Shown here: positions 24,335 through 64,000 of the stretch, piece after piece
Layout: each line of letters starts with the position of its first letter
Numbering within the stretch: position 1 is the stretch's first letter
IMG/VR virus record: IMGVR_UViG_3300005941_000003
Location: 124,001 to 188,000 of that record
Length of the DNA: 64,000 nucleotides
Direction: 5' to 3' (one strand)
Translations under genes and position numbers: made by a program
The notes under the pieces: generated by a model
Databases searched by the model: none
What the model was told of the DNA's origin: nothing
Seen by the model: only the letters and a program-made list of their open reading frames with translations

Positions 24335-24363
24335 TTGACTTTCATTTAGATCGGTAGTATACT
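24335..24363 (+). promoter_or_regulatory. Sigma70 promoter at the start of the glyco-island
   Basis: TTGACT (24335-40), 17 nt, TATACT (24358-63); AGGAG SD downstream. Confidence 0.8.
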
Positions 24364-24386
24364 CAAAGTAATATAGGAGTATAACT

Positions 24387-24758
24387 ATGGCTACAGATAT
24401 CCCAACAGAAAAGCTAATGAAGCTAGAACGTGCGCTTGAAACATCAAACGCGATGCAGACATTCAACCTTGCAAAAAATAATTTAAAAGTTAAAACACAA
24501 AATCTTCTATCGTATTCACACAACGGTGGCATCTTCAAAGTAGATCAAGGTCTAATCTCATTCGTTAACTATGTTATTGAATCCGGTAAAGATACTGTTG
24601 TGATTCTAGATAAGAATGAAATTCCAATTAAGATTGAAAATCTTTCACAATTCTTGGAAGATATTTCAAGTCTATATTTCGAAGCAGTAAATGAATATTA
24701 TAATGACTATGAAAAACTTCGTAGTTCACGTAAGATTGAAAAGGTACTAGAAATCTAA
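24387..24758 (+). CDS. Hypothetical protein (possibly fibre-assembly chaperone-like)
   Basis: Strong SD; TAATG coupling to the next gene. The function guess rests only on size and position. Confidence 0.6.
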   Translation: MATDIPTEKLMKLERALETSNAMQTFNLAKNNLKVKTQNLLSYSHNGGIFKVDQGLISFVNYVIESGKDTVVILDKNEIPIKIENLSQFLEDISSLYFEAVNEYYNDYEKLRSSRKIEKVLEI

Positions 24759-25624
24759 TGAGTAAAGGAATTCTCATATTTGCTAGAAACAATAGCACTA
24801 TAAAGTATGGAGAGATTGCCTGCCAGTGCGCTGGATTTGCAAAAGCGAATCTAAAAAAGTTTGATGAAATATGTTTAGTTACTGATCAAGAGACGTACAA
24901 TTCTGCATCCACAGAGATTGATTTTTGGTTCGACAGAGTTATCATTCAAGAAAAGATTCTAGAAAATAACAAACGTATGTTCAAAGACACAACAGCATCG
25001 ACACAGATTGATCAATTTTTTAATCTTGATCGTAGTATGGCATACCAACTTTCTCCATATGATGAAACTCTGATAATAGATGCAGACTACTTTGTATTGA
25101 GTAATGCATTAGATAATGTTTGGGGCAGTGAAAATAATTTCATGATCAACAAAAAGTATCGTGATATTGCTGGAATTCACGATACAGATGTTCATTACAT
25201 TGATGAATTTACTATTCCTATGCATTGGGCAACTGTTATATATTTTAGAAAATCTGATATTGCTGAGGACATTTTTACGCTAGTAACTCATATAAAAGAA
25301 CATTATCCATATTACAAAGATTTGTATAACTGTTCTGGTGGTATGTTTAGAAATGATTACGCGTTTAGTATCGCGTTGCATATATTGAACGGAAATATGG
25401 ATTCTAGTATACCAAGTTTACCTATTGAATATTTGAATAACAGTTTTGATACTGACGACATTTTTAGAGTGAATTCAACAAACGATATTATCATGTTTTG
25501 TTCAAAGAAAGAAAATCGAAGCGAACATATACTTGGAAGATTTGTAAACACCGACATCCACATCATGAATAAGTATGCATTAAGTAGACATTTGGATGAA
25601 TTTAGAAAGGTGTTACATGACTAA
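24758..25624 (+). CDS. GT-A fold glycosyltransferase-like protein (GT8 / mannosyltransferase-like)
   Basis: KGILIFA.NN...Y...A start and SPYDETLIIDADY DxD motif. Confidence 0.7.
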   Translation: MSKGILIFARNNSTIKYGEIACQCAGFAKANLKKFDEICLVTDQETYNSASTEIDFWFDRVIIQEKILENNKRMFKDTTASTQIDQFFNLDRSMAYQLSPYDETLIIDADYFVLSNALDNVWGSENNFMINKKYRDIAGIHDTDVHYIDEFTIPMHWATVIYFRKSDIAEDIFTLVTHIKEHYPYYKDLYNCSGGMFRNDYAFSIALHILNGNMDSSIPSLPIEYLNNSFDTDDIFRVNSTNDIIMFCSKKENRSEHILGRFVNTDIHIMNKYALSRHLDEFRKVLHD

Positions 25625-26477
25625 AGGTTATATTGCTATTGCACAGAATAACGCGGAAACAGATTACTTAAATCTGACATATGCTATGGCGTTAAGTCTG
25701 AAAGCAACACAAAAAGAAAATGCAATATGTGTATGTGTTGACGAACAAACAAAAGCACTCATTACTGATAAACACCGAGAAGTATTTGATCACATCGTGG
25801 ACATCCCTTTCGGTGATCCCGCCATATATCAATTATGGAAAATTCAAAACAAATGGAAATATGCACATATGACTCCGTTTGATGAAACCATTATTCTTGA
25901 TTGTGACCAAGTATTTACTGGTAGCGTAGATCATTGGTGGAAGCATCTTGCACGTAAAGATGTTTGGGCGTGTACGAATGTCAAAACATTTAGAGGCGAA
26001 AATGCAACAAGTGATTACTACCGAACCAAGTTTACAGAGTTGGATCTTCCTAATGTCTATAGTAATTTTACGTATTTTAAGAAGAATGAAAAAGGATTCG
26101 AATTCTTCAAGATGGTAGAACTCATTATGGAAAATTGGACTGTTTTCTATGATCAGTTCTTGAAAGGCAAAGGCCAGAATTGGATCAGCGCAGACGTTGC
26201 ATATGCGCTTGCAATAAAACTACTTGACATCGAAAACGAAGTATGCGATTATGACATTAAGGATGTGCCTACATTCGTGCATATGAAAAGTTACATTCAA
26301 AACGTTAATCGTGCAAAGATCGACAGTGTATGGACAAAATCTATTACTAGTGATTTAGCAGATGACGGCACCGTGACTATTGGCAACTATAAACAAAACT
26401 TGCCCGTACACTATGTCGAAAAAGACTGGATGACAGCGGAAAAAATAAAAGTATATGAGAGGCTATTAGGTATATGA
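25617..26477 (+). CDS. GT-A fold glycosyltransferase-like protein (paralog of the previous gene)
   Basis: KGYIAIAQNN, TPFDETIILDCD and FVHMK motifs. Start moved from 25596 to 25617 (AAGGTG SD, alignment with the paralog). Confidence 0.7.
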   Translation: MTKGYIAIAQNNAETDYLNLTYAMALSLKATQKENAICVCVDEQTKALITDKHREVFDHIVDIPFGDPAIYQLWKIQNKWKYAHMTPFDETIILDCDQVFTGSVDHWWKHLARKDVWACTNVKTFRGENATSDYYRTKFTELDLPNVYSNFTYFKKNEKGFEFFKMVELIMENWTVFYDQFLKGKGQNWISADVAYALAIKLLDIENEVCDYDIKDVPTFVHMKSYIQNVNRAKIDSVWTKSITSDLADDGTVTIGNYKQNLPVHYVEKDWMTAEKIKVYERLLGI

Positions 26478-27052
26478 TCAGTCTAAAAGAAAAAGATGAT
26501 AACACTAAAGCCAGAGTAGTTGTGTTTGGTACAGATGGTATTATAACAAAAATTTCAACAGTTGTGACAGGTGAAGAAACAAACTATGCATGGTTCGAGT
26601 TTGACACCATTAGACCATTTTTAACTGGTGAATATAAATTCTCTGACTATGTTGTTACTAAAACTAAGAACCCGCTTATATATCAGATAACAAAGAAAAG
26701 TATTGACTTTAAATCCCGGTCATCTGAAAAACAAATACAAAAAGTAACAAAGAATGATGATCCAGAACTAACTATAAAGTTTGATGGCAAACGTCTTGAA
26801 TTTACTTTAAACAAAAAACTTGTAGATGAAGCAAACGTTGTCAGTGGAAATGAAGTACTAATCGCAGGCAATGCGGTGCATCCATTTCACATTACATTTA
26901 AGGATAAGCCCGATTTCATTCTAAAGACTGTGACTATACCATATACTGATCTATTTTGCGGCGAGACTGTATCTTTAGATTTTAACTATGACCCGACTAA
27001 GATAAGTATATACACAAAAAAGTACTTCAATACATACTCTATGGAGCAATAA
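26474..27052 (+). CDS. Hypothetical protein
   Basis: ATGA overlap with the upstream stop; no recognisable motif. Confidence 0.65.
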   Translation: MISLKEKDDNTKARVVVFGTDGIITKISTVVTGEETNYAWFEFDTIRPFLTGEYKFSDYVVTKTKNPLIYQITKKSIDFKSRSSEKQIQKVTKNDDPELTIKFDGKRLEFTLNKKLVDEANVVSGNEVLIAGNAVHPFHITFKDKPDFILKTVTIPYTDLFCGETVSLDFNYDPTKISIYTKKYFNTYSMEQ

Positions 27053-28030
27053 ATGACAAAGCTAGTTATAGGCGACTTGGACATATTTTATCTAAGCTAT
27101 GATGAACCAAACAAAGAAGAACATTGGGCGAATCTTTTGCAAAAGTTCCCATACGCAAAGCGCGTAGATGGTGTAAAAGGTTTCGATAACGCACATAAGG
27201 AATGCGCGAGACAAAGTGACACTGATCGTTTTATCACGATTGATGGTGATAACATCGTAGACGAAAAGTTCTTTAACATTGAATTATCATTCCCAGAAGA
27301 TACAGATTTGAAAAATTCTGTTATCTCTTGGAGTGCTAAAAACATCGTTAATGGTTTAGTATATGGTAATGGTGGTATCAAATGTTGGCCAGTAGACCTT
27401 GTACTAGAAATGCAAACACATGAAAATGCAGTTGACGAAACAAAGAAGGTTGACTTCTGTTGGGACCTGAACTATATTCAGATGAACAATGTGTACTCAA
27501 TGGTGTTCAATGCGGGCTCGCCATTCCAAGCATTCCGTGCAGGATATCGTGAAGGTGTAAAAATGTCCCTTGATGAAGGTAAAACTGTACCAGCGGAAGA
27601 CTTCAAGAAGCGCATATGGCCAAAGAACTATGAACGACTATTAACTTGGTGTAACGTTGGTTCGGATATTGAGAATGGAATTTGGGCAATTTATGGTGCG
27701 CGGCTTGGTTGTTATGATGTAAACTTGAATCCAAACTTTGTTCTAGAGAATATCTCTAGTTACGATTGGTTCAAAGACTACTTTGAAAAACAAATTCTAC
27801 CAGAGTTTGAAGGCGGCGAAGAAACTTGCATGAGAACAAAAGTGAAATGGGATTACGATAAACTTTATACTGCATGTCTTGATCTAGGTGACACATTATC
27901 TGATAAGATAGGTATGGAACTTTGTGACCCAACTACAGAATTGTCTGCGTTCTTTAAACGCGTTTATACGAATCCACCAAGAGTAATGAACCCACTGGCA
28001 ACTGAAAAACAAACTGGCTGGGATAGGTAA
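27053..28030 (+). CDS. Glycosyltransferase-like protein (GT-A, DxD)
   Basis: FYLSYDEPN, RVDGVKGFDNAH, FITIDGDN and YGNGGIK motifs. Confidence 0.6.
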   Translation: MTKLVIGDLDIFYLSYDEPNKEEHWANLLQKFPYAKRVDGVKGFDNAHKECARQSDTDRFITIDGDNIVDEKFFNIELSFPEDTDLKNSVISWSAKNIVNGLVYGNGGIKCWPVDLVLEMQTHENAVDETKKVDFCWDLNYIQMNNVYSMVFNAGSPFQAFRAGYREGVKMSLDEGKTVPAEDFKKRIWPKNYERLLTWCNVGSDIENGIWAIYGARLGCYDVNLNPNFVLENISSYDWFKDYFEKQILPEFEGGEETCMRTKVKWDYDKLYTACLDLGDTLSDKIGMELCDPTTELSAFFKRVYTNPPRVMNPLATEKQTGWDR

Positions 28031-28033: not shown

Positions 28034-29851
28034 ATGGCTAATTATGACGACGATGCGGTCAATACACGCGTCAAGTTAAATCAGATATCTCCATCTATGT
28101 GTATGGCGAAGTGGTTGCAAGTGAGTTTGCACTTACCACAGGGTCGTACACATAGTTGTTATCACCCTCCAACACATACCATCCCACTAGATGAACTACG
28201 TGCAAATCCAAACGCACTACATAATACCTCTTTCAAAATGCTTGAACGCAAACAAATGAAAGAAGGCAAAAGACCTGAGGGTTGTCAGTATTGCTGGAAC
28301 GTAGAAGACGCACCAAATCCACCTGAAGGCGGCAGATTAAGTGATAGACATTATCGTTCTAGTGAATGGTGGGTACAAGAAGCATGGGATGAAGTTGTTA
28401 ATAACCCTTGGAACCATGACATATCTCCTAGATACGTTGAAGTAAATTTCAACCAAGCGTGTAACTTTAAATGTGCATACTGTTCTCCCCATTTGTCAAC
28501 AGCATGGGAAGACGATATTAAACAGCATGGGGCTTTCAAGTTTTCAAATAACACCCGCCACAATGAAATTACAAGTTTAGAGAGAAGTGGCTTAATGCCG
28601 CTAAAACTTTCACAAAAAGAAAATCCTTATATTTCTGCATTTTGGGAATGGTGGCCTACTGTATATCCCAACTTGAAAATATTCCGTATGACTGGCGGTG
28701 AACCTCTTATGGATAAAAACACATTTAAGGTGTTGGATTACATACGAGAAAACCCAAATCCAGAATTAGAGATATCTCTTACTACAAATATGTGCCCACC
28801 AGACGATGCGCTGTTTGATAAGTTTATGGACAAAATTAAAAAACTTGAAGAACCTATTATTCCTGAAAAGAGCAACACCCGTGTTGAGTTTGATAAGAGT
28901 ATATATTTGAAGCCACCAGTAGAGGGTAAACGTAAATTAGTATTTTACGTACAAGACCCAAAAGATGGTTCTGATTGGAAGACATGGGAACAGAAAGTTA
29001 TCTATGAAACACTACAGGGTGTATTTGTGGAATCTATGGTCCCAAATACGAAAACAATAAAGTTTAAGGAAATCGAACAGACTTTCACTGCATTAGGTCC
29101 ATGTGATGACGAAGATGACCATAGTTTTGTGTATGCAGCCGACTATGTTCTGGATAAAGAATATAATGTGTGGGAACATCAATATGAGAACGTATACGTC
29201 AAGCACATCAGTGTTTTCATAAGTCTAGATTCTGTCGGAGAGCAAGCAGAATACATCCGTGATGGTTTAGATTTCGAAAAATTAAAACGAAATGTTGACA
29301 GACTATTAAACGAAACACAACGTGTTAGTGTTACATTTATCAATACATTTAATATTCTAAGTATTCCTGGGTTGAAAGGTTTTCTAGAATATATGTTAGA
29401 GTTAAGACGTAAGTTTGGATACCAACATCAATTCGACAACAAACATAGAAAACCCGGACAACGAGTTTGGTTTGACATACCATATTTGAGATATCCTGAC
29501 TGGATTACGATACAACTTTGTGACCAAGATATGTTAGATACGATGCAAGAGTATATCGATTTCATGAAACAAAATGTGTTATCTAATGCTGATTATGGTT
29601 TGTCATATCATGGTTTTAAGAACTACGAAGTGTTGAAATTAGAACGAGATTTAGCTTGGGCAAAAACAGGTGATAAGCTCACTGAACAAGAACTAAGTGA
29701 TAAACTAGTAAGATTTTACGATTACTTCAACGAATACGATAGACGTAGAAATAAAAACTTTTTAGAAACATTCCCAGAAATGACAGATTTCTGGTTAGAA
29801 GCAAGAGAAGAACGAGAGATAAGATATGGGAAGAAAATACTGGGAAGGTGA
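28034..29851 (+). CDS. Radical SAM protein with N-terminal Twitch-type domain (#1; large internal insertion)
   Basis: MC.AKW...SCYH...CQYC N-domain; CNFKCAYC; TGGEPL. Confidence 0.9.
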   Translation: MANYDDDAVNTRVKLNQISPSMCMAKWLQVSLHLPQGRTHSCYHPPTHTIPLDELRANPNALHNTSFKMLERKQMKEGKRPEGCQYCWNVEDAPNPPEGGRLSDRHYRSSEWWVQEAWDEVVNNPWNHDISPRYVEVNFNQACNFKCAYCSPHLSTAWEDDIKQHGAFKFSNNTRHNEITSLERSGLMPLKLSQKENPYISAFWEWWPTVYPNLKIFRMTGGEPLMDKNTFKVLDYIRENPNPELEISLTTNMCPPDDALFDKFMDKIKKLEEPIIPEKSNTRVEFDKSIYLKPPVEGKRKLVFYVQDPKDGSDWKTWEQKVIYETLQGVFVESMVPNTKTIKFKEIEQTFTALGPCDDEDDHSFVYAADYVLDKEYNVWEHQYENVYVKHISVFISLDSVGEQAEYIRDGLDFEKLKRNVDRLLNETQRVSVTFINTFNILSIPGLKGFLEYMLELRRKFGYQHQFDNKHRKPGQRVWFDIPYLRYPDWITIQLCDQDMLDTMQEYIDFMKQNVLSNADYGLSYHGFKNYEVLKLERDLAWAKTGDKLTEQELSDKLVRFYDYFNEYDRRRNKNFLETFPEMTDFWLEAREEREIRYGKKILGR

Positions 29852-49204: not shown

Positions 49205-49235
49205 CTCTTTTTTTACTAGAAGTGGAAAAAATATT

Positions 49236-51340: not shown

Positions 51341-51345
51341 ATATG

Positions 51346-51361: not shown

Positions 51362-51367
51362 TGGATA

Positions 51368-54067: not shown

Positions 54068-54072
54068 TGGTT

Positions 54073-56717: not shown

Positions 56718-56735
56718 AATAACGGAGAGTATTGA

Positions 56736-57965
56736 ATGAGTAAAATTGGATTTATTGGCGTTGGTAAACTAGGCATGCCCTGTGCAGAAACGGTTGCACG
56801 TAAGGGACATGATACGAAAGGTTACGATGTAGCACCACGTAGCAGTGAACATATCACAGTGGTGAATTCAATTGAAGAACTTGTACATGATCGTGATATT
56901 GTGTTTATTGCAGTACCTACACCACATGATCCTCTTTACGATGGCAATGCTCCAACTGCACATTTAGAGCCAAAAGACTTTGATTATTCTATTGTGCGAG
57001 AATGTATCATTGAAGCAAACAAACATATGAATTCTAGTCAATTACTAGTATTAATTAGTACAGTTTTGCCGGGAACAACTCGCCGTGAATTTATTAAACA
57101 TATTACTAACCCACGATTTGTTTATAACCCATATTTAATTGCGATGGGTTCGGTTGCATGGGATATGGTAAATCCAGAGATGGTTATGATCGGTACGCAA
57201 GATGGCGATGCTAATGGTGATGCGCGTGAATTAACTGATTTCTATCGTACAATTATGGAAAATGATCCTCGCTATGTAGTAGGTACTTGGGACGAATGCG
57301 AAGCAATTAAAGTATTTTACAATACATTTATTTCCGCTAAAATCGGTCTTGTTAATATGATTCAAGATGTTGCAGAGGCGCAAGGTAATATTAATGTTGA
57401 CGTAGTTACTGATGCACTAGCACAATCAACAATGCGTATTATGGGACCACAGTATATGAAAGCCGGTATGGGAGATGGCGGCGGTTGTCACCCACGTGAT
57501 AATATTGCACTACGATATATGGCAAGTGAATTAAATCTAGGCTATGATTTATTTGATTCGATTATGGGCGCACGTGAAATTCAAGCAAAGAATATTGCAA
57601 AGCGTCTTGCATATTATGCAACAAAGCATTCACTGCCAGTTGTTATTCACGGCAAAGCATACAAGCCAAATGTCCCATATGTCGAGGGCAGCTATTCTAT
57701 GTTAATCGGCAGCTATCTAGATGAAAGGGGCATTCATCATTATTATGTTGATCCATTGACAGGTGATACTGTTATTCCTTCTGGACCAGCTGTATTTTTA
57801 ATGGCTCACAGTGCGTCAACTACATATGAATATACTGGAAATACGCACGAAGATAAATTGTATTGTGAAATTCCACAAGGTTCAATTGTCATTGACCCAT
57901 GGCGTAAATTCGAAAAAGTGGATGGCATTACTGTTTATCATTATGGAAATTCGAGACAGAATTAA
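56736..57965 (+). CDS. UDP-glucose/GDP-mannose 6-dehydrogenase family protein (full length)
   Basis: GFIGVGKLG, IAVPTP, STVLPGTT, KVFYNTFIS, GDGGGCHPRD, GKAYKP and IDPW motifs. Confidence 0.9.
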   Translation: MSKIGFIGVGKLGMPCAETVARKGHDTKGYDVAPRSSEHITVVNSIEELVHDRDIVFIAVPTPHDPLYDGNAPTAHLEPKDFDYSIVRECIIEANKHMNSSQLLVLISTVLPGTTRREFIKHITNPRFVYNPYLIAMGSVAWDMVNPEMVMIGTQDGDANGDARELTDFYRTIMENDPRYVVGTWDECEAIKVFYNTFISAKIGLVNMIQDVAEAQGNINVDVVTDALAQSTMRIMGPQYMKAGMGDGGGCHPRDNIALRYMASELNLGYDLFDSIMGAREIQAKNIAKRLAYYATKHSLPVVIHGKAYKPNVPYVEGSYSMLIGSYLDERGIHHYYVDPLTGDTVIPSGPAVFLMAHSASTTYEYTGNTHEDKLYCEIPQGSIVIDPWRKFEKVDGITVYHYGNSRQN

Positions 57966-59188
57966 TGATTTTTCAAATTGATAAACTAATTGATAACCTA
58001 AAAAATAATAATTGGAATTATTTTTGGGATAGAATTAATATTGATGAATATGTCGCCAGACCTACAGCAATTTATATATACGCCGGGGGTAATGGTGACC
58101 TAGAATATGTACACATGCCATATAATAAATTTTTTCAAGATTTTATGGAAAAATACAAATTAAAGATTACCAGTGAATTAAATAGAGAGATAAGAACAGG
58201 TAAAATATTTGAAAGACCTATAGTTTTTCAAACATGTGAAGGTTTTACATTAGAAGAAAATACTCAATTTATAAGAGATATTTTAAATGAATATACAGAT
58301 AAAATACCGGATATTTTTAATAGAGTTATATTAATTCATTCAAGTTTTAACCATTCACTTGATACATATAGAGTTAATAACGTTATAAGACTTCACGATA
58401 TTGTATTCACCTTTGTTTATCTTGCAGGCAAATACCCTAAATATTTTGTTGATAAAGATTATAGTATAATACCAACAGAAAAAAGTTTTAAAAAAATATT
58501 CGGATGTTTTATTACCAGAAATGCATATGATAGGGTAAAAATATACTATCATATAATTAAAAACTATAAAAATGATAGTGTTGCATATTGTCATAGTTCA
58601 GAAATACAAAAAGCATTAAATGATATATTTGATGATTATGACATTGATCAACACACAAATCATGATATGGTAAAAGTAAATCAAAATATTGACAATTTAA
58701 ATAAAACCTATCAACAGTTTGTAATAACCGATTTACAAGAAAAAATGAAAGACGTATTTGTTGATGTTATTAGTGAAACTGTATTTTTTGAGGATAATAA
58801 TGTTTGGGTTACAGAAAAAACAGTTACACCTATAACACTTGGTTTACCTTTTATTATTTCATCAACCTCTGGAATTTATGAGTTGTTACATTATTTGGGA
58901 TTTAAAACATTTTCAGATTTTTGGGACGAATCATTTGACGCTGAGACTGATCATATAGAACGTAATAAAAAATTTTTGAATACATTAGATTATATAGCAG
59001 AAACATATAATACCGAAGAAAAAAGAAAAGAAGCATACAAAAAGATGCTTCCAATTCTAGAACATAATCGCCAGCGTATGATTTATTTTTTTGAAAACCC
59101 AAGAGAAGTGTTAGGTTATATCAAACACACAGATAAAGCAATTGCAGAATTAGAATCTATATTAAAATCCGCATATCCAAATAGTTAA
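57965..59188 (+). CDS. Glycosyltransferase-like protein, 'TEKT' family (#3; very AT-rich)
   Basis: VISET...VTEKTVTPI..GLPFI...LGFKTFSDFWDESFD motif. Confidence 0.5.
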   Translation: MIFQIDKLIDNLKNNNWNYFWDRINIDEYVARPTAIYIYAGGNGDLEYVHMPYNKFFQDFMEKYKLKITSELNREIRTGKIFERPIVFQTCEGFTLEENTQFIRDILNEYTDKIPDIFNRVILIHSSFNHSLDTYRVNNVIRLHDIVFTFVYLAGKYPKYFVDKDYSIIPTEKSFKKIFGCFITRNAYDRVKIYYHIIKNYKNDSVAYCHSSEIQKALNDIFDDYDIDQHTNHDMVKVNQNIDNLNKTYQQFVITDLQEKMKDVFVDVISETVFFEDNNVWVTEKTVTPITLGLPFIISSTSGIYELLHYLGFKTFSDFWDESFDAETDHIERNKKFLNTLDYIAETYNTEEKRKEAYKKMLPILEHNRQRMIYFFENPREVLGYIKHTDKAIAELESILKSAYPNS

Positions 59189-59952
59189 TCTCTGCGTTCA
59201 ATATCGTCTTCTGTTAGTTTATCTCCCATCCAAACTTCAATTACTTTAGCAGGAGTTTCTCCAACATTTACTGCTTTGTGCCAGCATAATGCAGGTATAT
59301 CAAAACTGTTTCCTTGTGGAACAATAAATGTTTGTTTGCCTTCATCATCTTCTACTGTTATTTCAATGACGCCTTCAATAACATGCCAGTGTTCACTACG
59401 ATTAAAATGGCGCTGATCACTCAAAGATTTACCTGCTTCAAATTCTAGTTCTTTTACTTGCCAACCGGGACCTTTATGTAGAACGGTATAAATGCCCCAT
59501 GCACGTTCGGTCTTTGGTTTACTCCAGTTTTCAAGTATCCAAGACGAACTATTCATCTTTCGTGAACCGCCTACTTTCCAAGCAAATTCAACATCTTTAT
59601 TATCGTGAAATGTTTTAAACTCTGGTACGTTTGTGTTAACGCGGTCTCCGCCATTTGCAAAGACTACTTTCCACTTAGATCCTTTAGTTGATAGAACTTG
59701 CATAATAGCGGCACATGCAGTGCCATCATCGTCGTTGAACCCTATAACTTCATCAACCATTTCTAAGTGTTTGATAATATTTGCACGTTCCTCAAACGAC
59801 ATAAATGGTCTACCCTTTTTTCGAGTAAGCCAAGCGTCACTATTCACACCTACAATTAGATGGTCTCCCAACTCTTTGGCAGCTTTGAAATATTCGATAT
59901 GTCCTGAATGCAGTGGGTCAAACCCACCAGTCACTAAAACTACTTTACTCAT
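59185..59952 (-). CDS. Cytidylyltransferase (HIGH family) fused to an MPI type II-like cupin
   Basis: TGGFDPLHSGH, VGVNSD.WL.RKKG, FANGGDR and K.NSSS; then RAWG.Y...SLSDQRH..RSEHW. Confidence 0.88.
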   Translation of the reverse strand: MSKVVLVTGGFDPLHSGHIEYFKAAKELGDHLIVGVNSDAWLTRKKGRPFMSFEERANIIKHLEMVDEVIGFNDDDGTACAAIMQVLSTKGSKWKVVFANGGDRVNTNVPEFKTFHDNKDVEFAWKVGGSRKMNSSSWILENWSKPKTERAWGIYTVLHKGPGWQVKELEFEAGKSLSDQRHFNRSEHWHVIEGVIEITVEDDEGKQTFIVPQGNSFDIPALCWHKAVNVGETPAKVIEVWMGDKLTEDDIERRD

Positions 59953-61144
59953 TATTCACCTCAACAAATGGTTTTGTACGTTCCCATAGCCATGGGTTGA
60001 ATTCACCCCAATGCTCATTTCGTATTCTATTCACTGCGGCATCGGTGTTGACAAAATGTTTAAAGTCGCCTGTCTCATTTAATTCGTTCAGCATCCACTT
60101 GAATATAGAATAACCTGGGTAGTTGTCTGATATAGAATTTAAATATTCTGCTACTTCTTTTTTAACTTCGTCTGGTAGATTTCTAGGTAGCATCCAATCA
60201 GGACCATCCGCCATAACATAATGTGTCCAGCGCATTCCCTTTTGTAGTGAATAATCAATCAACTCGTGGAACGAATTACAGTTGTAGATAGATGCAACAC
60301 TATGGAAACTGATAGTGGTTTTGCTCTTAGTTGCTTTGCGAGTTTTTTCCCACTCCAAGAACCAATCAACTACTTCCTCTACTCTCTGCCAAGAACTACC
60401 TTTGCGTAGAAAATCGTTCAACTTACCATAACTGTCTACACTCAATTGCACGTTGACTTCTTTGCATTGATTTAGTAGACCGGTCAATTCTTCGTTTGGG
60501 GTAGTTGTGGTATTTGTTGCAATAAGTATCTTTAATTCAGGTAGATTACATTTCTTTAGAACACTAATGAATTTCTCTTGCTCCATCAGAGGTTCGCCGC
60601 CGATCATTTTGATAAACTTTAGATTACTTAAATCGTAGTCTTCAATGATACTATTCTTTGCGACAACACCACGTCTTGGTTCGCCGCCCCATCCTAGCTT
60701 TTTAGCATCTGCGTACCAGTTTGTACTTAATTCAGGTCCGCACATACGACATCTGTTATTGCATACGTTACTCAGTGCAAGGTCGATGTTTGTTAGATAG
60801 TGATAATCTCTGTTTGAATTTTCTGCAAATTCAGCAGCATCAGGAATACCAAAGTTAATGAAAGGAGATGAAATGTCAGTACGCATACTGCTACCAGAAA
60901 TTTCTTCGTCGCGATAACAGCTTGCACAACCTGGGTGCGCTTCATCGTTGCGCATCTTTTCACGAAGATCAACCATGAAAGGGTGATTGAATGGATCAGG
61001 GTGATCAATTCTTAAATCTTCTGGTACTTCTTCTTGTCTGAAATAACAACATGGAAAAATCCCACCATCTGGTCTAATAGCCAGATGATGGAATGGAAGT
61101 GGACATGCGTGTTTATGTTTTATTTGGAAATTTCTGTCTGCCAT
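59945..61144 (-). CDS. Radical SAM protein with N-terminal Twitch-type domain (#10)
   Basis: ACPLPF...PCC...CASC; CNNRCRMC; IGGEPL. Confidence 0.92.
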   Translation of the reverse strand: MADRNFQIKHKHACPLPFHHLAIRPDGGIFPCCYFRQEEVPEDLRIDHPDPFNHPFMVDLREKMRNDEAHPGCASCYRDEEISGSSMRTDISSPFINFGIPDAAEFAENSNRDYHYLTNIDLALSNVCNNRCRMCGPELSTNWYADAKKLGWGGEPRRGVVAKNSIIEDYDLSNLKFIKMIGGEPLMEQEKFISVLKKCNLPELKILIATNTTTTPNEELTGLLNQCKEVNVQLSVDSYGKLNDFLRKGSSWQRVEEVVDWFLEWEKTRKATKSKTTISFHSVASIYNCNSFHELIDYSLQKGMRWTHYVMADGPDWMLPRNLPDEVKKEVAEYLNSISDNYPGYSIFKWMLNELNETGDFKHFVNTDAAVNRIRNEHWGEFNPWLWERTKPFVEVNNE

Positions 61145-61170
61145 AATAAGTCCTATATTATATACGAACT

Positions 61171-61177
61171 TATTTAT
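61171..61177 (-). promoter_or_regulatory. Probable late promoter ATAAATA for the rSAM #10 / cytidylyltransferase pair
   Basis: Overlaps the upstream stop codon; AGGA SD before ATG 61144. Confidence 0.55.
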
Positions 61178-61968
61178 GCAAACTTTACGTAGTTCAAACG
61201 AGTTTCTTTGATATCAGGTTCGCGCCATACTGTTTCGAAACTCTTTACTTTCGCGTTGATTTTGAATACGCCAGTGTGGTTTGCAATTGATTCTTTGGAA
61301 GTAAAGAAAGAAACACGATTGCCGTCAATAGTGATAGCAGATACATTATAGCCTCCGTATTGTTCTGATTTACGTTTGTTGATAATTTCAATCTCAGTGT
61401 CGATTACACCACCAGCGGCGCCGATGTGTGCGCTCAGTGCGCTACGATCCCGAAGCGATTTTGATTCTTCTTCGCGCTTATCATAGAATGGCACGTATGC
61501 GACGATTCCGATATCTGAATAACTTACTTCGTCTTTTGCGATGAAACCATGAACACCGCGCTCAAACTCATTCATATTATCACTCAAAACTTTGAACATG
61601 AATTCAAGTTCGAGCCGTGCAATAATATCACGCGCCTGTTCGATTAGTTTTTCACTGATTTGACCAGGGAATGACAGCAGTGCAGCAATTGTGATACTAC
61701 GATTAGAATCGCGTTTCATAAGATAGCGAGTACTTTCAGTCCCGTCTATATTCATGTGTGTGATATATTCATTTACCGGACTTGTGGCTTTGATATATTC
61801 ACCATCATTGAAATCTATTGCCAACAAAGCGGCGGCAAGAGCCACTTCTTTCGGATGCTTTTTTTCTTTAAAATCTTGCAGTTCAGTATAGTGGTAACTA
61901 TCTAAACAAGTATCAAAGCGTCCAAAATACTTAACGCCGCGTTCTCCTGGGATATGATCCATACTCAT
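61174..61968 (-). CDS. Hypothetical protein with a probable C-terminal OB-fold
   Basis: HIG..G...EIEI...GNRVSFF...KINAKVK...ETRLNYVK pattern. Confidence 0.55.
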   Translation of the reverse strand: MSMDHIPGERGVKYFGRFDTCLDSYHYTELQDFKEKKHPKEVALAAALLAIDFNDGEYIKATSPVNEYITHMNIDGTESTRYLMKRDSNRSITIAALLSFPGQISEKLIEQARDIIARLELEFMFKVLSDNMNEFERGVHGFIAKDEVSYSDIGIVAYVPFYDKREEESKSLRDRSALSAHIGAAGGVIDTEIEIINKRKSEQYGGYNVSAITIDGNRVSFFTSKESIANHTGVFKINAKVKSFETVWREPDIKETRLNYVKFA

Positions 61969-61972: not shown

Positions 61973-62179
61973 TTACTCGCAATCTATTGTCTTATTTACT
62001 TCACATTCAAGATAGTAGATATCTTCATAATATGAACCAAGAATAGTGTCACGTTCTATTTGAACAATTGCTAACCACTGTCCTACGCGAACCGGATCAG
62101 TTACGAATACAGCAGATGTAACAGTTACAAACGTAACAGCAGCGATAATAACAAGGTCACGAACATTCGAAAGATTCAT
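61973..62179 (-). CDS. Small hypothetical membrane protein
   Basis: Hydrophobic LVIIAAVTFVTVTSAVFV segment; tightly packed between its neighbours. Confidence 0.6.
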   Translation of the reverse strand: MNLSNVRDLVIIAAVTFVTVTSAVFVTDPVRVGQWLAIVQIERDTILGSYYEDIYYLECEVNKTIDCE

Positions 62180-62181
62180 GA

Positions 62182-62457
62182 TTACACCCGAATTTTGTTA
62201 ATGTTACGGAGATCAGCATCGTGATCGTCAACAATCTTCCCCGAAGGGAAGTAGAAGCGACGAGAACCGTTGCCTTCAATTTGATCGGTGTCGAGATAGC
62301 GATAACCACGATAGTTACCAGTTTCAAACAGAATAGCTTCCATCAGCGCACAAACACCTTCGCGTTCATCAGCAGTGGTGTTTTCAGCAGCGAGGAACGA
62401 GTTTGCCATACGCAGAATTTTGCCAACTTCAACAGTCTTACGAGCAACTTTAGCCAT
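62182..62457 (-). CDS. Small early hypothetical protein
   Basis: AAGGAG SD and its own promoter cassette. Confidence 0.75.
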   Translation of the reverse strand: MAKVARKTVEVGKILRMANSFLAAENTTADEREGVCALMEAILFETGNYRGYRYLDTDQIEGNGSRRFYFPSGKIVDDHDADLRNINKIRV

Positions 62458-62460
62458 TGT

Positions 62461-62521
62461 GAGTCTCCTTCTCTTGACTACAGTATTAATATAGCATGAT
62501 TCGTGTGATTGTCAAGAATTA
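62461..62521 (-). promoter_or_regulatory. Repeated early promoter/5'UTR cassette, copy 1 (TTGACA..TGATTCG..CTATAT)
   Basis: Minus strand CTTGACAatcacacGAATCatgCTATATTaatac...gtagtcaagagaaggag; TGATTCG at 62497-62503. Confidence 0.8.
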
Positions 62522-62803
62522 AAAACCAATACTTTCACCATTTGCAATCTTTTCTACATAAGAAGAACCAAGAGTGCAGAGTTTAATTTCATCGCGCTTA
62601 CCGCCAGCAGCAACACATTCGTCAACCATTTTGTTTGCCGCTTCCTGCATCATACGAGTGAAGCGTTGCTGATCTGCCACAGTGAGCGAACGGAACATGT
62701 CCGCCATCGTGCTTTCAAAGTAGCCTGCAGCGTATGCATGTGAGCCGTATACTTGACGACTGGCGTCGCTGAAGTCTTTTGCGTATTCTTTAAAGTCCTG
62801 CAT
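62519..62803 (-). CDS. Small early hypothetical protein
   Basis: GAGG SD and its own promoter cassette. Confidence 0.75.
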   Translation of the reverse strand: MQDFKEYAKDFSDASRQVYGSHAYAAGYFESTMADMFRSLTVADQQRFTRMMQEAANKMVDECVAAGGKRDEIKLCTLGSSYVEKIANGESIGF

Positions 62804-62806
62804 AGT

Positions 62807-62865
62807 GTGTCCTCTCTCTGACTACTCTATTAATATAGCATGATTCGTTGTATTGTCAAGAATTA
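62807..62865 (-). promoter_or_regulatory. Repeated early promoter/5'UTR cassette, copy 2
   Basis: Near-identical to copy 1 (tattaatatagcatgattcgt...attgtcaagaatta); TGATTCG at 62841-62847. Confidence 0.8.
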
Positions 62866-63060
62866 ATCGAATGCTACCTTGACAACATTGCCATCTGGAT
62901 CGAACATAGTGCTTACACGACCTTTGCATTTGCTGCTAGTCCGGCAACGCCACCAACTGTCAGCTTGGTCCTGAGTGTCAACAAATACAGAACTCCACTC
63001 AAGAACCCCACTTGGGTTCTCGGCATTTAGACGATTGTATTGTGCGCGGAGTTCCCACAT
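62863..63060 (-). CDS. Small early hypothetical protein
   Basis: GAGAG SD; flanked by promoter cassettes. Confidence 0.65.
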   Translation of the reverse strand: MWELRAQYNRLNAENPSGVLEWSSVFVDTQDQADSWWRCRTSSKCKGRVSTMFDPDGNVVKVAFD

Positions 63061-63065
63061 GTTTA

Positions 63066-63118
63066 ACTCTCTCTTGATTACAAGACAGTTATATAGTGAT
63101 TCGTTTTAACTGTCAACT
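63066..63118 (-). promoter_or_regulatory. Repeated early promoter/5'UTR cassette, copy 3
   Basis: TTGACA (63116-11), TGATTCG (63097-63103), CTATATAAC -10 region and gtaatcaagagagag leader. Confidence 0.7.
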
Positions 63119-63258
63119 ATTAAAATGGTGGATCTTCTGGTACTTTATCTTCCAACTTTCCACTCATAATGTCCCACACACGTTGCTTTTCCATATGTTC
63201 AACATAATGAGAGCGACGACCGTCCTTGATATATGAACATTCGTGCGATTGTCAAGTA

Positions 63259-63266
63259 GATAAATA
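63259..63266 (+). promoter_or_regulatory. Late promoter GATAAATA
   Basis: Upstream of the AGGAG SD and ATG 63292. Confidence 0.65.
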
Positions 63267-63291
63267 AAGTTAGAAGTTAATAGGAGTTACT

Positions 63292-64000
63292 ATGTTATAC
63301 GCAAATGGATGCAGTTTTACATACGGTACAGGTCTTGCACTAAAAGATAAAGCATGGCCTTTTGAACTAGCAGAGTTGTTAGGTTTCGATAGAACAGAAA
63401 CAGTCACGGAAGCACAACGAGGCGTGTCAAATCAATACATTGTACGCAATACGATCACGACAGTTAGTGAACTTATACAGAATGGTAAGAAGCCATTTGT
63501 TGCTATTGGGCTAACTGCACCCAGTAGACGCGAACATTTTATAAAGGAAAAGAATATTCTAATTCACAATATTCCTGCACATGAGTATCATGGTAACATT
63601 ATGTTAGATGAACAAACAAACAGAGATTTAGATTTGTTTAACACTCTATACATGAAACATTTCTGGTCACCAGTTTATGACTTTCATACATACTTGATGC
63701 ATGTGGTACAGATACAAAACTTCTGCAAACAGAATGATCTAGAGTATGTTATATTCAATAGTTTGAACTTGACTCCAAATCTTCTTGAACCTACTAAGTT
63801 TACAGAACTTTGTGAGCAAGCGGACATGGGTCCGGTACTTGCACAATTAGATATGACACATATATATGAACAGCAGACATTCTTTACATACATGCACGAC
63901 AACGAACTGTTCTTTGACCAAGAAGGCGATGAACGATACATGCATCCAAATGAACAAGCACACAGTGAGTGGGCAAAGATCATATTCGATGATATCGAAA
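63292..64000 (+). CDS. SGNH-like protein (#5; runs off the right edge; not in the ORF track)
   Basis: My translation is MLYANGCSFTYGTG...AWP...AQRGVSNQYI...GLTAPSRRE...YMHPNEQAHSEWAKII, open to the edge; AGGAG SD. Confidence 0.8.
   Translation, partial: MLYANGCSFTYGTGLALKDKAWPFELAELLGFDRTETVTEAQRGVSNQYIVRNTITTVSELIQNGKKPFVAIGLTAPSRREHFIKEKNILIHNIPAHEYHGNIMLDEQTNRDLDLFNTLYMKHFWSPVYDFHTYLMHVVQIQNFCKQNDLEYVIFNSLNLTPNLLEPTKFTELCEQADMGPVLAQLDMTHIYEQQTFFTYMHDNELFFDQEGDERYMHPNEQAHSEWAKIIFDDIE

What the first reader, a model, noticed from the sequence alone, without database searches (positions are those of the whole stretch)
24335..64000. Candidate new system: a ~40 kb radical-SAM-rich glycan synthesis and tailoring island fused to the tail module
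Seen: directly after the fibre-like genes come about 40 mostly overlapping genes. They include 10 radical SAMs, 5 SGNH-like proteins, about 8 GT-like proteins in several paralogous families, NDP-sugar enzymes, two methyltransferases, a sulfotransferase-like protein, a kinase, two nucleotidyltransferases and a redoxin. At least 8 TAAATA late-type elements precede island genes. No Wzx/Wzy/ABC exporter, polyprenol-phosphate transferase or obvious membrane protein is present among them. Established: these families build and decorate nucleotide sugars, some phages and giant viruses glycosylate their virions, and DNA-modification genes are normally expressed pre-replicatively. Inference: a cytoplasmic, late-acting pathway that coats virion proteins with a complex, variable glycan using radical chemistry. 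Host-surface or DNA modification are less favoured alternatives.
Basis: partly seen in the sequence, partly recalled or inferred. Interest (0 to 1): 0.9.

Follow-up and report, generated by a model that had tools for sequence, protein, structure and literature searches.

The report
Radical-SAM glycan island beside tail genes
An uncultured 342-kb marine jumbo phage devotes about 59 kb directly after its tail-fibre genes to soluble sugar-building enzymes and 15 radical-SAM enzymes; this recurring, uncharacterised module most likely makes an unusual glycan, possibly to decorate the phage's own tail.

Summary
Ten radical-SAM genes, NDP-sugar enzymes, two methyltransferases, two nucleotidyltransferases and a redoxin are confirmed, and no island protein has a transmembrane segment. 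Nine of the radical SAMs are paralogs of one curated but uncharacterised family, NF033640 (N-terminal twitch domain). Three of the "about 8 GT-like" proteins get fold or paralogy support (two GT8-like, one divergent GT-A). The other five, the sulfotransferase-like protein and four of the five SGNH-like proteins rest on motifs only.

The island is larger than reported. In the same genome it runs to about coordinate 83,000, giving roughly 59 kb and 14+1 radical SAMs. It has a conserved backbone found after the giant tail protein and fibres in about 55 distinct related metagenomic loci and in one cultured phage, Ralstonia RsoM2USA. Variable cassettes sit between the backbone genes.

In three of four annotated bacterial chromosomal contexts, the same radical-SAM family lies among glycosyltransferases, and in two of them also ABC-transporter genes. 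This supports a role in glycan tailoring.

The acceptor (virion protein, host envelope or DNA) and the timing are unresolved. A non-random TAAATA motif precedes seven island genes, but a conserved sigma70-like promoter heads the island.

Similar tail-linked sugar and radical-SAM islands have been described in marine T4-like phages, so this is a new variant of a known kind.

The parts
12929..21667 (+). Giant (2912 aa) virion/baseplate-associated protein. It is context and the left anchor of the conserved synteny.
   Evidence: tblastn matches giant virion structural proteins of PA5oct/Rak2/CBB-type jumbo phages. A homolog lies upstream of the module in 64 of 77 related loci.
21724..24331 (+). 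p220 plus two paralogous fibre-like proteins, fibA (22448-23335) and fibB (23354-24331).
   Evidence: They are paralogs. p220 hits phrog_11259. They are present in 47-75 of 77 related loci at 26-59% identity.
24335..24363 (+). Sigma70-like promoter (TTGACT-17-TATACT) in the 55-nt gap before the first island gene.
   Evidence: The equivalent TTGAC-N16-18-TAnnnT element is present in 35 of 52 distinct relatives. The other 17 have a terminator hairpin here, and at least 5 of those also show ATAAATA.
24387..24758 (+). p123, a conserved small protein of unknown role (backbone).
   Evidence: No family hit. Present in 76 of 77 loci at 43-74% identity, and 31% identical to RsoM2USA ORF354.
24758..25624 (+). 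GT8a, a paralog of GT8b and a putative GT-A glycosyltransferase (backbone).
   Evidence: Paralogy. Hits phrog_1903. Has a D-A-D motif. Present in 77 of 77 loci and 36% identical to RsoM2USA ORF353.
25596..26477 (+). GT8b, a GT8/glycogenin-like GT-A fold glycosyltransferase (backbone).
   Evidence: AlphaFold model with pLDDT 88. Foldseek top hits are glycogenin, GT8 3tzt, LgtC, the UGGT catalytic domain and GlyE, at E about 3e-7, probability 1.0 and TM 0.4-0.5. The profile-to-PDB search gives weak glycogenin hits. D102-x-D104 and H229 are invariant.
26474..27052 (+). p192, a poorly conserved small protein between conserved enzymes. It is a possible adaptor, chaperone or acceptor (backbone position).
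   Evidence: Only 22-44% identity in 61 loci, while its neighbours are 50-84% identical. No family hit.
27053..28030 (+). p325, the most conserved island protein. It has a divergent GT-A-like fold with an invariant D-G-D motif.
   Evidence: 52-84% identity with 110 invariant columns. Model pLDDT 79. Fold hits are weak but uniformly GT-A. 47.5% identical to RsoM2USA ORF350. A paralogous domain forms the C-terminus of the 938-aa protein just beyond the window.
28034..31385 (+). R605 (28034-29851) and R519 (29826-31385), two N-terminal-twitch radical SAMs (backbone).
   Evidence: NF033640 scores of 303 and 306 bits. Present in 69 of 77 loci at a median of 68% and 61% identity. They match RsoM2USA ORF349. 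The CxxxCxxC motif, the GGE motif and four N-terminal Cys are invariant.
31401..33096 (+). Variable cassette: a 204-aa sulfotransferase-like protein (motif only) and G371, a member of the 31981/37426/57965 family.
   Evidence: Present in only 8 and 6 of 77 loci. No Pfam, PHROG or PDB support.
33083..34501 (+). R472, an N-twitch radical SAM (backbone).
   Evidence: NF033640 score of 321 bits. Present in 62 of 77 loci at a median of 66% identity.
34510..38613 (+). Variable block: SGNH-like 34510, N-twitch rSAM 35354, GDSL/SGNH-like 36588, and G395 (37426).
   Evidence: The G395 family has 47 homologs, none with a Pfam domain, and no PDB-sequence hit.
38603..44637 (+). Sugar-nucleotide tailoring block: a small cupin (WbuC-like, weak), unknown 38986, a shortened DegT/LegC-PseC-like aminotransferase (202 aa), an NDP-hexose C-methyltransferase, a TylF-type O-methyltransferase, an AhpC/redoxin, a shortened UDPG/GDP-Man dehydrogenase (264 aa), and an SDR epimerase/dehydratase.
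   Evidence: Pfam and NCBIfam.
44646..50441 (+). Array of four N-twitch radical SAMs (44646, 46541, 47798, 49236) with SGNH-like 45766.
   Evidence: NF033640 scores of 247-384 bits, paralogy and motifs.
50438..54050 (.). Two paralogous 312-aa proteins of unknown fold on the - strand (50438-51376 and 53112-54050). They flank a kinase-like gene (51368-52078, +) and an NTP_transf_3 nucleotidyltransferase (52069-53115, +).
   Evidence: Both 312-aa proteins hit phrog_13607. Only 12 representatives were found among 1.84 billion proteins, with no PDB hit.
54067..59188 (+). Canonical rSAM-SPASM (54067), HisC/CobD-like aminotransferase (54974), SGNH-like (56052), NDP-sugar dehydrogenase (56736) and G407 (57965).
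59185..61968 (-). Minus-strand trio: an RfaE-domain-II-like nucleotidyltransferase fused to a PMI-type cupin (59185-59952), an N-twitch rSAM (59945-61144), and the 264-aa protein (61174-61968, phrog_2319).
   Evidence: The same nucleotidyltransferase-cupin fusion sits beside rSAM arrays in unrelated metagenomic loci.
61973..63260 (-). Cassette of four repeated sigma70-like promoters (TTGACA-N16-TATATT-type). Each is followed by an RBS and a small ORF, one of which has a hydrophobic helix. It has an early-gene look and interrupts the island.
63292..64000 (+). SGNH-like/DUF6071 gene that runs off the window. It is the first gene of the second conserved block.
   Evidence: Read in full from L013, which is the same genome (100% identity over 51,177-64,000). 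It scores 34.8 bits against DUF6071 and is conserved at 75-81% in relatives.

Best explanation
The region is a phage-encoded, entirely soluble pathway that builds and tailors unusual sugars and transfers them to an intracellular acceptor.

Shown: a conserved backbone sits directly downstream of the giant tail protein and the fibres. It consists of p123, two GT8-like glycosyltransferases, p192, a divergent GT-A-like protein and three N-terminal-twitch radical SAMs. Just beyond the window it continues with a second p325-like protein and a 331-aa protein.

Shown: variable cassettes are inserted into this backbone. They carry NDP-sugar dehydrogenases, an epimerase/dehydratase, aminotransferases, C- and O-methyltransferases, nucleotidyltransferases, a carbamoyltransferase, SGNH-like proteins and many more radical-SAM paralogs.

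Inferred: the nucleotidyltransferases and SDR, PLP and methyl enzymes make activated, decorated sugars. The N-twitch radical SAMs abstract sugar C-H hydrogens to oxidise, epimerise, deoxygenate or otherwise rearrange those sugars or the nascent glycan. The GT-A enzymes attach the products.

Inferred, least secure: the acceptor is a tail or baseplate protein made from the adjacent genes. The virion would then carry a lineage-variable glycan coat on its host-recognition apparatus.
For: 1. Enzyme content is confirmed by Pfam and NCBIfam.
2. All nine window N-twitch rSAMs keep the CxxxCxxC motif, the GGE motif and four N-terminal Cys. They therefore look catalytically active.
3. GT8b has a glycogenin/LgtC/UGGT/GlyE-like fold with an invariant DxD. 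p325 gives uniformly GT-A fold matches.
4. In bacterial chromosomes the same rSAM family lies inside glycan loci:
   - Crocinitomicaceae: GT2, UGDH, GT4, GDSL, Wzt ABC plus Wzt_C, and a methyltransferase.
   - Acidobacteriota: GT2, GT4, GT9-methyltransferase, YdjC, and a GT2-radical-SAM fusion.
   - Bacteriovoracaceae: GT1, ABC2 transporter and PMT_2.
5. No island protein has a membrane segment or exporter domain.
6. Synteny with the giant tail protein and fibres holds in about 55 distinct metagenomic loci (77 fetched, redundant copies merged) and in the cultured soil phage RsoM2USA.
7. The enzymes are more conserved than the fibres: p325 is 52-84% identical and GT8b 50-73%, against 26-59% for the fibres.
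8. TAAATA is 12-fold enriched upstream of starts. It is shared by two structural genes and seven island genes. Distant relatives have a terminator hairpin, several followed by (T)ATAAATA, in front of the module.
Against: - No glycan, acceptor or expression data exist.
- Five of the eight 'GT-like' proteins have no support beyond motifs.
- No member of NF033640 is characterised. The family has no close solved structure, only generic rSAM-core hits at E about 2e-3. The chemistry is therefore conjecture.
- Twitch/SPASM radical SAMs more often modify peptides.
- The island's head carries a conserved sigma70-type promoter. An early-looking promoter cassette lies upstream of three island genes. Expression may therefore not be late.
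- One bacterial context has no glycosyltransferases.
- The fibre and giant proteins show no sequon enrichment or obvious acceptor tail.
- Several sugar genes are shortened (39872, 42956) and may be inactive.
Confidence: 0.45

Rival explanations
1. Host-envelope remodelling. The phage makes unusual activated sugars, and possibly soluble transferases, that feed the host's own LPS, capsule or S-layer glycosylation machinery. This would change the cell surface during infection, blocking superinfection or preventing progeny from re-adsorbing to lysing cells.
For: In bacteria the N-twitch rSAM family sits in exported-glycan loci with Wzt/ABC transporters. This is the interpretation published for the analogous islands of pelagimyophages (PMC7029224). 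A possibly early sigma70-type promoter heads the island.
Against: The island has no initiating transferase, flippase, polymerase, ligase or any membrane protein. Every membrane step would have to be borrowed. Conserved linkage to fibre genes across hosts as different as marine bacteria and Ralstonia is not expected for a pathway that must fit a particular host's envelope machinery.
Confidence: 0.2
2. DNA hypermodification. The soluble glycosyltransferases decorate hydroxymethylated bases of the phage genome with elaborate sugars to evade restriction and CRISPR.
For: Soluble phage glycosyltransferases that build diverse glycans on DNA are known (Pyle et al. 2024, as cited in PMC12619734). The absence of membrane proteins fits an intracellular polymer acceptor. 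The sigma70-like promoters would allow pre-replicative expression.
Against: No hydroxymethylase, base-kinase or DNA-binding domain is in the window or the 19 kb beyond it. The module is embedded in the tail operon and shares the TAAATA motif with baseplate genes. The rest of the 342-kb genome could not be inspected.
Confidence: 0.12
3. Protein or peptide maturation. The N-twitch radical SAMs act like SPASM/twitch RiPP or anSME-type enzymes, installing cross-links, epimerisations or formylglycine in tail proteins. The sugar genes would be a separate, co-located function.
For: Most characterised SPASM/twitch enzymes act on peptides. Secondary NCBIfam hits are to peptide maturases. The position next to fibre genes also fits.
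Against: The secondary hits are far below their cutoffs (18-76 bits against 180-855). No precursor peptide or RRE domain was seen. Three of four bacterial contexts are glycan loci. In related phage loci the rSAM arrays sit beside sugar genes such as the nucleotidyltransferase-cupin fusion and UGDH, and SIS and carbamoyltransferase genes.
Confidence: 0.1
4. Soluble metabolite. The island makes a diffusible aminoglycoside-, nucleoside- or oligosaccharide-type small molecule, for example an inhibitor of competing phages or of host processes.
For: The enzyme set resembles deoxysugar tailoring in natural-product clusters (C-methyltransferase, TylF, DegT, carbamoyltransferase, twitch rSAM as in BtrN). 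This resemblance is from family knowledge only.
Against: There is no scaffold synthase (PKS, NRPS or cyclitol synthase) and no exporter or resistance gene. Multiple glycosyltransferases and the tail linkage are not explained.
Confidence: 0.08

Closest known systems
'Host recognition cluster' (HRC) islands of marine T4-like pelagimyophages and cyanomyophages (Zaragoza-Solas et al. 2020, PMC7029224)
   Same: A large variable island lies inside the tail/baseplate region, directly after a giant baseplate protein and the fibres. It carries glycosyltransferases, LPS-type sugar genes (rfaE-like, UDP-glucose dehydrogenase) and radical-SAM gene cassettes. The function is unproven.
   Different: The phage lineage differs. 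Here the giant protein and wedge are of the Rak2/PA5oct/SCTP-2 jumbo type, with no cyanophage hits. The island here has a strongly conserved enzymatic backbone (GT8a/b, p325, three rSAMs) and 14+1 radical SAMs. The backbone genes have no detectable homolog in any cultured T4-like phage.
NCBIfam NF033640, 'twitch domain-containing radical SAM protein' (N_Twi_rSAM)
   Same: Nine window proteins, and five more just beyond the window, are full-length members above the curated cutoff. They have the N-terminal four-Cys domain followed by the CxxxCxxC core.
   Different: The family is named for its architecture only, and no substrate or reaction is known. The phage carries it as a 14-copy paralog array. 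Cultured phages such as KVP40 carry one distant copy in an unrelated context.
Virion glycosylation of mycobacteriophages (Freeman et al. 2023, as cited in PMC12619734) and the virus-encoded glycosylation of chloroviruses and mimiviruses (own knowledge)
   Same: Virus-encoded soluble glycosyltransferases lie next to structural genes. Glycan synthesis is cytoplasmic, without the host's export machinery.
   Different: Those systems have demonstrated glycans on capsid, tail-tube or fibril proteins and do not use radical-SAM enzymes. Here no glycan has been observed, and the presumed target is the tail or fibre apparatus.
Bacterial ABC-transporter-dependent O-antigen/capsule loci containing N-twitch radical SAMs (e.g. 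Crocinitomicaceae MAG locus L135)
   Same: The same radical-SAM family co-occurs with UGDH, glycosyltransferases, GDSL-type proteins and methyltransferases.
   Different: The bacterial loci carry Wzt/ABC exporters and multi-pass membrane proteins. The phage island has none.

Membership tests
Radical SAM superfamily (PF04055) | CxxxCxxC cluster motif and a GGE-type SAM-binding motif, with a Pfam score above gathering | tested here: met
   Nine of ten proteins score above 29.5 bits. 29826 scores 25.4 bits but reaches 306 bits on NF033640. C122/C126/C129 and G182-G183-E184 are invariant in the nine paralogs.
NF033640 N_Twi_rSAM | Full-length match above the curated 170-bit cutoff, with the twitch-like Cys-rich domain N-terminal to the rSAM core | tested here: met
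   Scores are 238-384 bits over model positions about 1-398. Pfam SPASM hits lie at residues about 3-113, ahead of the Radical_SAM hits. C8, C26, C68 and C71 are invariant.
NF033640 N_Twi_rSAM | A known substrate or reaction | not testable with these tools
   The model is a 'subfamily' named by architecture. No paper mentions it, and there is no close solved structure.
Glycosyltransferase family 8 (glycogenin/LgtC type) | GT-A fold with a DxD metal and nucleotide-sugar site | tested here: met
   For GT8b, the model has pLDDT 88. Top Foldseek hits are glycogenin, 3tzt, LgtC, UGGT and GlyE. D102-x-D104 is invariant in 24 homologs.
Glycosyltransferase family 8 (glycogenin/LgtC type) | Sequence-model membership (Pfam Glyco_transf_8 at gathering score) | tested here: not met
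   GT8a and GT8b have no Pfam hit at E<=0.01. None of the 120 listed homologs (of 486 found) carries a precomputed Pfam domain. The profile-to-PDB search gives glycogenin only at E = 0.04-0.9.
GT-A fold glycosyltransferases (for p325, 27053) | Rossmann-like GT-A fold with DxD at the end of a central strand | tested here: inconclusive
   The model has pLDDT 79. All interpretable PDB and BFVD matches are GT-A enzymes or nucleotidyltransferases, but at E = 4e-3 to 0.3 and TM about 0.3. D64-G65-D66 is invariant.
GT10-type fucosyltransferases (for 31981/37426/57965) | Any sequence-model or fold match beyond the short E...Y-x-(S/T)-E-K-like motif | tested here: not met
   No Pfam or PHROG hit. The 47 homologs have no Pfam domains. 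The profile finds nothing relevant in the PDB.
SGNH/GDSL hydrolases | Block I G-D/C-S nucleophile, block II Gly, block III Asn and block V D-x-x-H, with a Pfam score above gathering | tested here: inconclusive
   G-x-S and the block II Gly are invariant in all five proteins. A C-terminal D..H is present in four. The only Pfam hits are 36588 at 21.3 bits (cutoff 23.6) and 63292 to DUF6071.
Bacterial surface-polysaccharide gene cluster (Wzx/Wzy or ABC type) | Initiating polyprenol-phosphate transferase, flippase or ABC exporter, and polymerase or ligase (membrane proteins) | tested here: not met
   No such Pfam domains were found. No transmembrane segment occurs in any island protein.
HRC island of T4-like marine myophages | [quoted passage not shown] | tested here: not met
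   The giant protein matches Rak2/PA5oct-type virion proteins, not cyanophage or pelagiphage VrlC. The right boundary, at about 83 kb, is a strand switch into unannotated genes. The resemblance is in organisation, not homology.
Phage virion glycosylation system | Glycan demonstrably attached to a virion protein | not testable with these tools
   This needs purified virions. The only cultured carrier is RsoM2USA, and its paper reports no glycan analysis.
Phage DNA glyco-hypermodification system | Hydroxymethylase or base-activating enzymes together with DNA-directed glycosyltransferases | tested here: inconclusive
   None was found in the window or in the 19 kb beyond it. The remaining roughly 260 kb of the genome could not be read.

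The most novel reading that the evidence does not exclude
The N-terminal-twitch radical SAMs are a large, uncharacterised class of glycan- or NDP-sugar-tailoring radical enzymes. A widespread lineage of aquatic and soil jumbo phages uses a conserved GT8-like/GT-A/rSAM machine, diversified by paralog expansion (14 copies here), to post-translationally coat its tail-fibre apparatus with a radical-tailored, lineage-variable glycan. This would be the first radical-SAM-dependent virion glycosylation system.
Probability: 0.3. Interest if true: 0.85.

Novelty: new variant of a known kind. Interest (0 to 1): 0.65.

Why it matters
If the module glycosylates the tail apparatus, host recognition in a widespread group of ocean jumbo phages would depend partly on phage-made sugars as well as on protein sequence. 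That would affect host range, defence evasion and particle stickiness.

Whatever the acceptor, NF033640 is a large family: more than 7,000 relatives were scored from one query. It has no known reaction, and its contexts point to a possible new branch of radical carbohydrate chemistry. These contexts are phage sugar islands, and bacterial loci rich in glycosyltransferases (two of them also carrying ABC-transporter genes).

RsoM2USA carries the minimal module and is culturable. This makes the question experimentally tractable.

Tried and rejected
- Nucleotide search of both halves of the window against 50,697 phage records found no match.
- tRNA scan found none.
- Rfam found nothing, either at gathering threshold over the whole window or at E<=1 over 47.6-49.4 kb. 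I had wondered whether the GC-rich gaps were SAM riboswitches.
- A back-translation search with the nine-paralog alignment failed because the paralogs are too divergent.
- Profile-to-PDB sequence searches gave nothing for the 37426 family, the 53112 family, p325, the 204-aa 'sulfotransferase-like' protein and the 331-aa protein beyond the window.
- The KVP40 and K566 contexts of distant rSAM homologs were uninformative.
- The RsoM2USA paper says nothing about these genes.
- N-x-S/T sequon enrichment in the fibre and giant proteins was absent.
- 'Moraphages' (PMC12619734) have four core glycosyltransferase groups. That paper mentions neither radical SAM nor RsoM2USA/XacN1 and reports genomes only up to 307 kb, so I did not equate the lineages.
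- A lookup of the Gemmatimonadaceae homolog failed, probably because I chose the wrong start codon.
- I considered and rejected calling the whole island hypervariable. About ten genes are a conserved backbone.

Full report
WHAT THE WINDOW IS

The first 24 kb encode a myovirus baseplate and tail module.
- A hub protein carries a VanY domain, followed by a gp25-like wedge and a 1435-aa wedge protein (phrog_10646, E = 9e-235). A head maturation protease lies on the opposite strand.
- The wedge protein is 34-40% identical to those of jumbo phages SCTP-2, CBB, PA5oct, Atu_ph07 and Rak2-like phages.
- The 2912-aa protein matches the giant virion proteins of the same group. It does not match cyanophage VrlC.
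- There is no nucleotide match to any deposited phage.
- The same sequence occurs in IMG/VR contigs, the longest being 342,181 bp. The window therefore comes from an uncultured aquatic jumbo phage.

CHECK OF THE OBSERVATION

About 42 tightly packed ORFs follow the fibre-like genes. The confirmed content is as follows.
- Pfam and NCBIfam confirm ten radical SAMs.
- Nine of them are mutual paralogs and full-length members of NCBIfam NF033640, 'twitch domain-containing radical SAM protein'. They score 238-384 bits against a cutoff of 170.
- In these nine, a four-Cys twitch/SPASM-like domain lies N-terminal to the CxxxCxxC core. All cluster ligands and the GGE motif are invariant.
- The tenth, at 54067, is a conventional rSAM-SPASM.
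- Also confirmed are:
  - an SDR epimerase/dehydratase;
  - an NDP-sugar dehydrogenase plus a shortened second copy;
  - a shortened DegT (LegC/PseC-like) aminotransferase;
  - a HisC/CobD-like aminotransferase;
  - a small cupin;
  - an NDP-hexose C-methyltransferase and a TylF-type O-methyltransferase;
  - an AhpC-type redoxin;
  - an NTP_transf_3 nucleotidyltransferase;
  - an RfaE-domain-II-like nucleotidyltransferase fused to a PMI-type cupin.
- No island protein has a hydrophobic segment typical of a membrane helix.

Weaker items:
- The kinase has only sub-threshold hits.
- The five SGNH-like proteins share block I, II and V motifs. Only one has a marginal GDSL hit, and one hits DUF6071.
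- The 'sulfotransferase-like' protein has no support beyond its N-terminal motif.

Of the 'about eight GT-like' proteins:
- GT8b (25596) folds with pLDDT 88 into a GT8/glycogenin-type GT-A fold. Foldseek E is about 3e-7 against glycogenin, LgtC, UGGT and GlyE. Its DxD is invariant.
- GT8a is its paralog.
- p325 (27053) gives weak but uniformly GT-A matches.
- The 31981/37426/57965 and 50438/53112 families remain unassigned.

THE ISLAND IS LARGER THAN THE FINDING

L013, L177 and L189 are the same genome, 100% identical over the shared 12.8 kb. Beyond coordinate 64,000 come:
- the rest of the DUF6071/SGNH-like gene and a third paralog of the 312-aa family;
- a NodU/CmcH-type carbamoyltransferase;
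- a 938-aa protein whose C-terminus is a p325 paralog;
- two more conserved genes;
- five further N-twitch radical SAMs interleaved with unknown genes.

Gene orientation flips at about coordinate 83,000. The island is therefore about 59 kb and holds 14 N-twitch radical SAMs plus one canonical one. That is roughly a sixth of the genome.

COMPARATIVE ANATOMY

Eighty IMG/VR loci were anchored on GT8b. Three come from the window's own genome, and the other 77 collapse to about 55 distinct gene orders. They show one backbone:

giant protein - p220 - fibre(s) - p123 - GT8a - GT8b - p192 - p325 - R605 - R519 - (variable) - R472 - (variable).

- The enzymes are more conserved than the receptor-side proteins. 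p325 is 52-84% identical, R605 39-86% and GT8b 50-73%. The fibres are 26-59% identical and the giant protein 22-48%.
- Between backbone genes, different relatives carry different cassettes. These include the 204-aa protein, G371-type proteins, SGNH-like proteins, UGDH, extra radical SAMs and many unknowns.
- Among 50,697 deposited phages, only Ralstonia jumbo phage RsoM2USA has the module. It has the order p123, GT8a, GT8b, p192, p325, one N-twitch rSAM, a second p325-like protein, and a homolog of the 331-aa gene that lies at 70.4 kb in this genome. This block follows its giant protein and fibres directly.
- A metagenomic relative (L194) shows a similarly compact order.
- The window's genome thus looks like this compact module split by about 35 kb of variable insert. 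A second variable rSAM array follows the module.

WHAT THE RADICAL SAMS ARE ASSOCIATED WITH ELSEWHERE

- The query 49236 has more than 7,000 scored relatives.
- In other phage contigs, arrays of 4-9 copies sit with the same nucleotidyltransferase-cupin fusion, and with UGDH, ribulose-phosphate epimerase, SIS isomerase, HAD and carbamoyltransferase genes.
- In species-representative genomes the family occurs in Bdellovibrionota, Bacteroidota, Elusimicrobiota, Acidobacteriota and others, often as 2-8 paralogs.
- Four chromosomal contexts were annotated:
  - A Crocinitomicaceae locus has GT2, UGDH, GT4, GDSL, Wzt-type ABC ATPase with Wzt_C, and a methyltransferase.
  - An Acidobacteriota locus has GT2, GT4, a GT9-methyltransferase fusion, YdjC and a GT2-radical-SAM fusion protein.
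  - A Bacteriovoracaceae locus has GT1, an ABC2 transporter and PMT_2.
  - A Geminicoccales locus has envelope genes but no glycosyltransferase.
- This is guilt by association, but it points to glycan tailoring rather than peptide maturation.
- No member is characterised. The nearest solved structures share only the generic core.

TIMING SIGNALS

- TAAATA is genuinely promoter-like here. Nine of its 37 occurrences lie within 45 nt upstream of start codons, which make up 2% of the sequence. It ranks second of 3,336 hexamers and far above other AT-only hexamers.
- It precedes the gp25-like wedge gene, p220 and seven island genes. Three of those seven sites are only 6-7 nt from the ATG.
- Against a purely late programme, the 55-nt gap before p123 holds a TTGACT-17-TATACT element. 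The equivalent sigma70-type promoter is conserved in 35 of 52 distinct relatives.
- The other 17 relatives have a terminator hairpin at that position. At least 5 of them also show ATAAATA.
- A cassette of four near-identical TTGACA-N16-TATATT promoters with small ORFs at 62.0-63.3 kb (- strand) lies upstream of p264, an N-twitch rSAM and the nucleotidyltransferase-cupin gene.
- A sigma70-like element also fronts the prohead-protease operon. Such promoters are therefore not diagnostic of early genes in this phage.
- Timing cannot be settled from sequence.

INTERPRETATION

The well-supported part is that this is a soluble, phage-encoded sugar-activation, tailoring and transfer system with a massively expanded radical-SAM family. 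It is genetically coupled to the tail module and built as a conserved core plus variable cassettes.

The chemistry of the radical SAMs is inferred from family precedent (BtrN-type twitch enzymes; own knowledge) and from gene neighbourhoods. The proposed reactions are C-H abstraction on sugars leading to oxidation, epimerisation or deoxygenation.

The acceptor is the weakest link.
- Favouring tail or baseplate proteins: the conserved synteny across very different hosts, the lack of any export gene, the TAAATA motif shared with baseplate genes, and the protein-glycosylating relatives of the GT8-like fold.
- Not excluded: host-envelope remodelling through borrowed host machinery, DNA glyco-modification, RiPP-like protein modification, or a soluble metabolite.

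My estimates are about 0.75 that the island makes or tailors a glycan, and about 0.4 that the acceptor is a virion protein.

COMPARISON WITH WHAT IS KNOWN

- The closest described thing is the 'host recognition cluster' of marine T4-like pelagi- and cyanomyophages. It is a hypervariable island after the giant baseplate protein that carries fibres, glycosyltransferases, rfaE/UGDH-type genes and radical-SAM cassettes. It was interpreted as host O-antigen modification (PMC7029224).
- A T4-like environmental genome with 12 radical-SAM genes was noted in 2017 (PMC5332604).
- The present case differs in phage lineage, in having a conserved GT8-like/GT-A/rSAM backbone that also exists in a cultured soil phage, and in scale.
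- It is therefore a new variant of a known kind, not a categorically new system.
- Its main value is that it defines a minimal, culturable model (RsoM2USA ORF354-347) and links an uncharacterised radical-SAM family to glycan loci.

Noticed in passing
window 61,973-63,260 (- strand): Four near-identical sigma70-like promoter units (TTGACA-N16-TATATT/TATATC/TATATA, two with an extended -10 TG). Each is followed by an RBS and a small ORF (about 28, 66, 94, 91 and 68 aa). The last ORF (61,973-62,179) has a hydrophobic helix. It looks like an early-gene cassette dropped into the island.
   Followed up: partly
window 47,735-47,797 and 49,109-49,235 (+ strand): Two unusually GC-rich intergenic gaps between radical-SAM genes in an AT-rich genome. 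The first folds into two stable hairpins (-35.9 kcal/mol, z = -3.9). Neither has an Rfam match. The second does not fold better than shuffled controls.
   Followed up: partly
window 39,872-40,480 and 42,956-43,750: Two sugar genes are shortened relative to their families. The DegT/LegC-PseC-like aminotransferase has 202 aa, matched in two pieces with an internal gap and no C-terminal third. The UDPG/GDP-Man dehydrogenase has 264 aa and lacks the first ~70 positions of the N-terminal domain and the UDP-binding domain. They may be decaying copies.
   Followed up: no
L100, L142, L153 (genome contigs): Contigs binned as Legionellales and Haliscomenobacter MAGs carry fibB-like, GT8a/b, p325 and radical-SAM arrays in the phage order. 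They are probably jumbo-phage contigs mis-binned into bacterial MAGs. One 'Elusimicrobia' bin (MJ-2014_bin-0981) contributes 13 separate loci with the family.
   Followed up: no
L176:1134-3521 (Acidobacteriota MAG, 513-kb contig): A 795-aa protein fuses a GT2 glycosyltransferase domain to a radical-SAM/SPASM domain. It sits next to N-twitch radical SAMs. It is a possible 'Rosetta stone' for radical chemistry on glycans. Its rSAM part appears to be of the canonical order rather than N-twitch: the corresponding ORF was not matched by the N-twitch HMM.
   Followed up: partly
L175:4574-5068 (Bacteriovoracaceae): A Peptidase_S74 gene (the intramolecular chaperone domain of phage tail spikes and endosialidases) and two N_methyl (pilin-like) genes lie in the same bacterial neighbourhood as three radical SAMs, a GT1, an ABC2 transporter and PMT_2.
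   Followed up: no
window 7,734-8,257: Divergent promoter region. A TTGACA-N17-TATAGT element faces the minus-strand operon that ends in the prohead protease. ATAAATA faces the gp25-like wedge gene. This shows both promoter types at structural genes.
   Followed up: no
Xanthomonas phage XacN1 versus RsoM2USA: XacN1 is described as the closest relative of RsoM2USA (PMC8504454). It gave no tblastn hit to GT8b, p325 or R605. The module therefore seems to be gained or lost within that clade.
   Followed up: no
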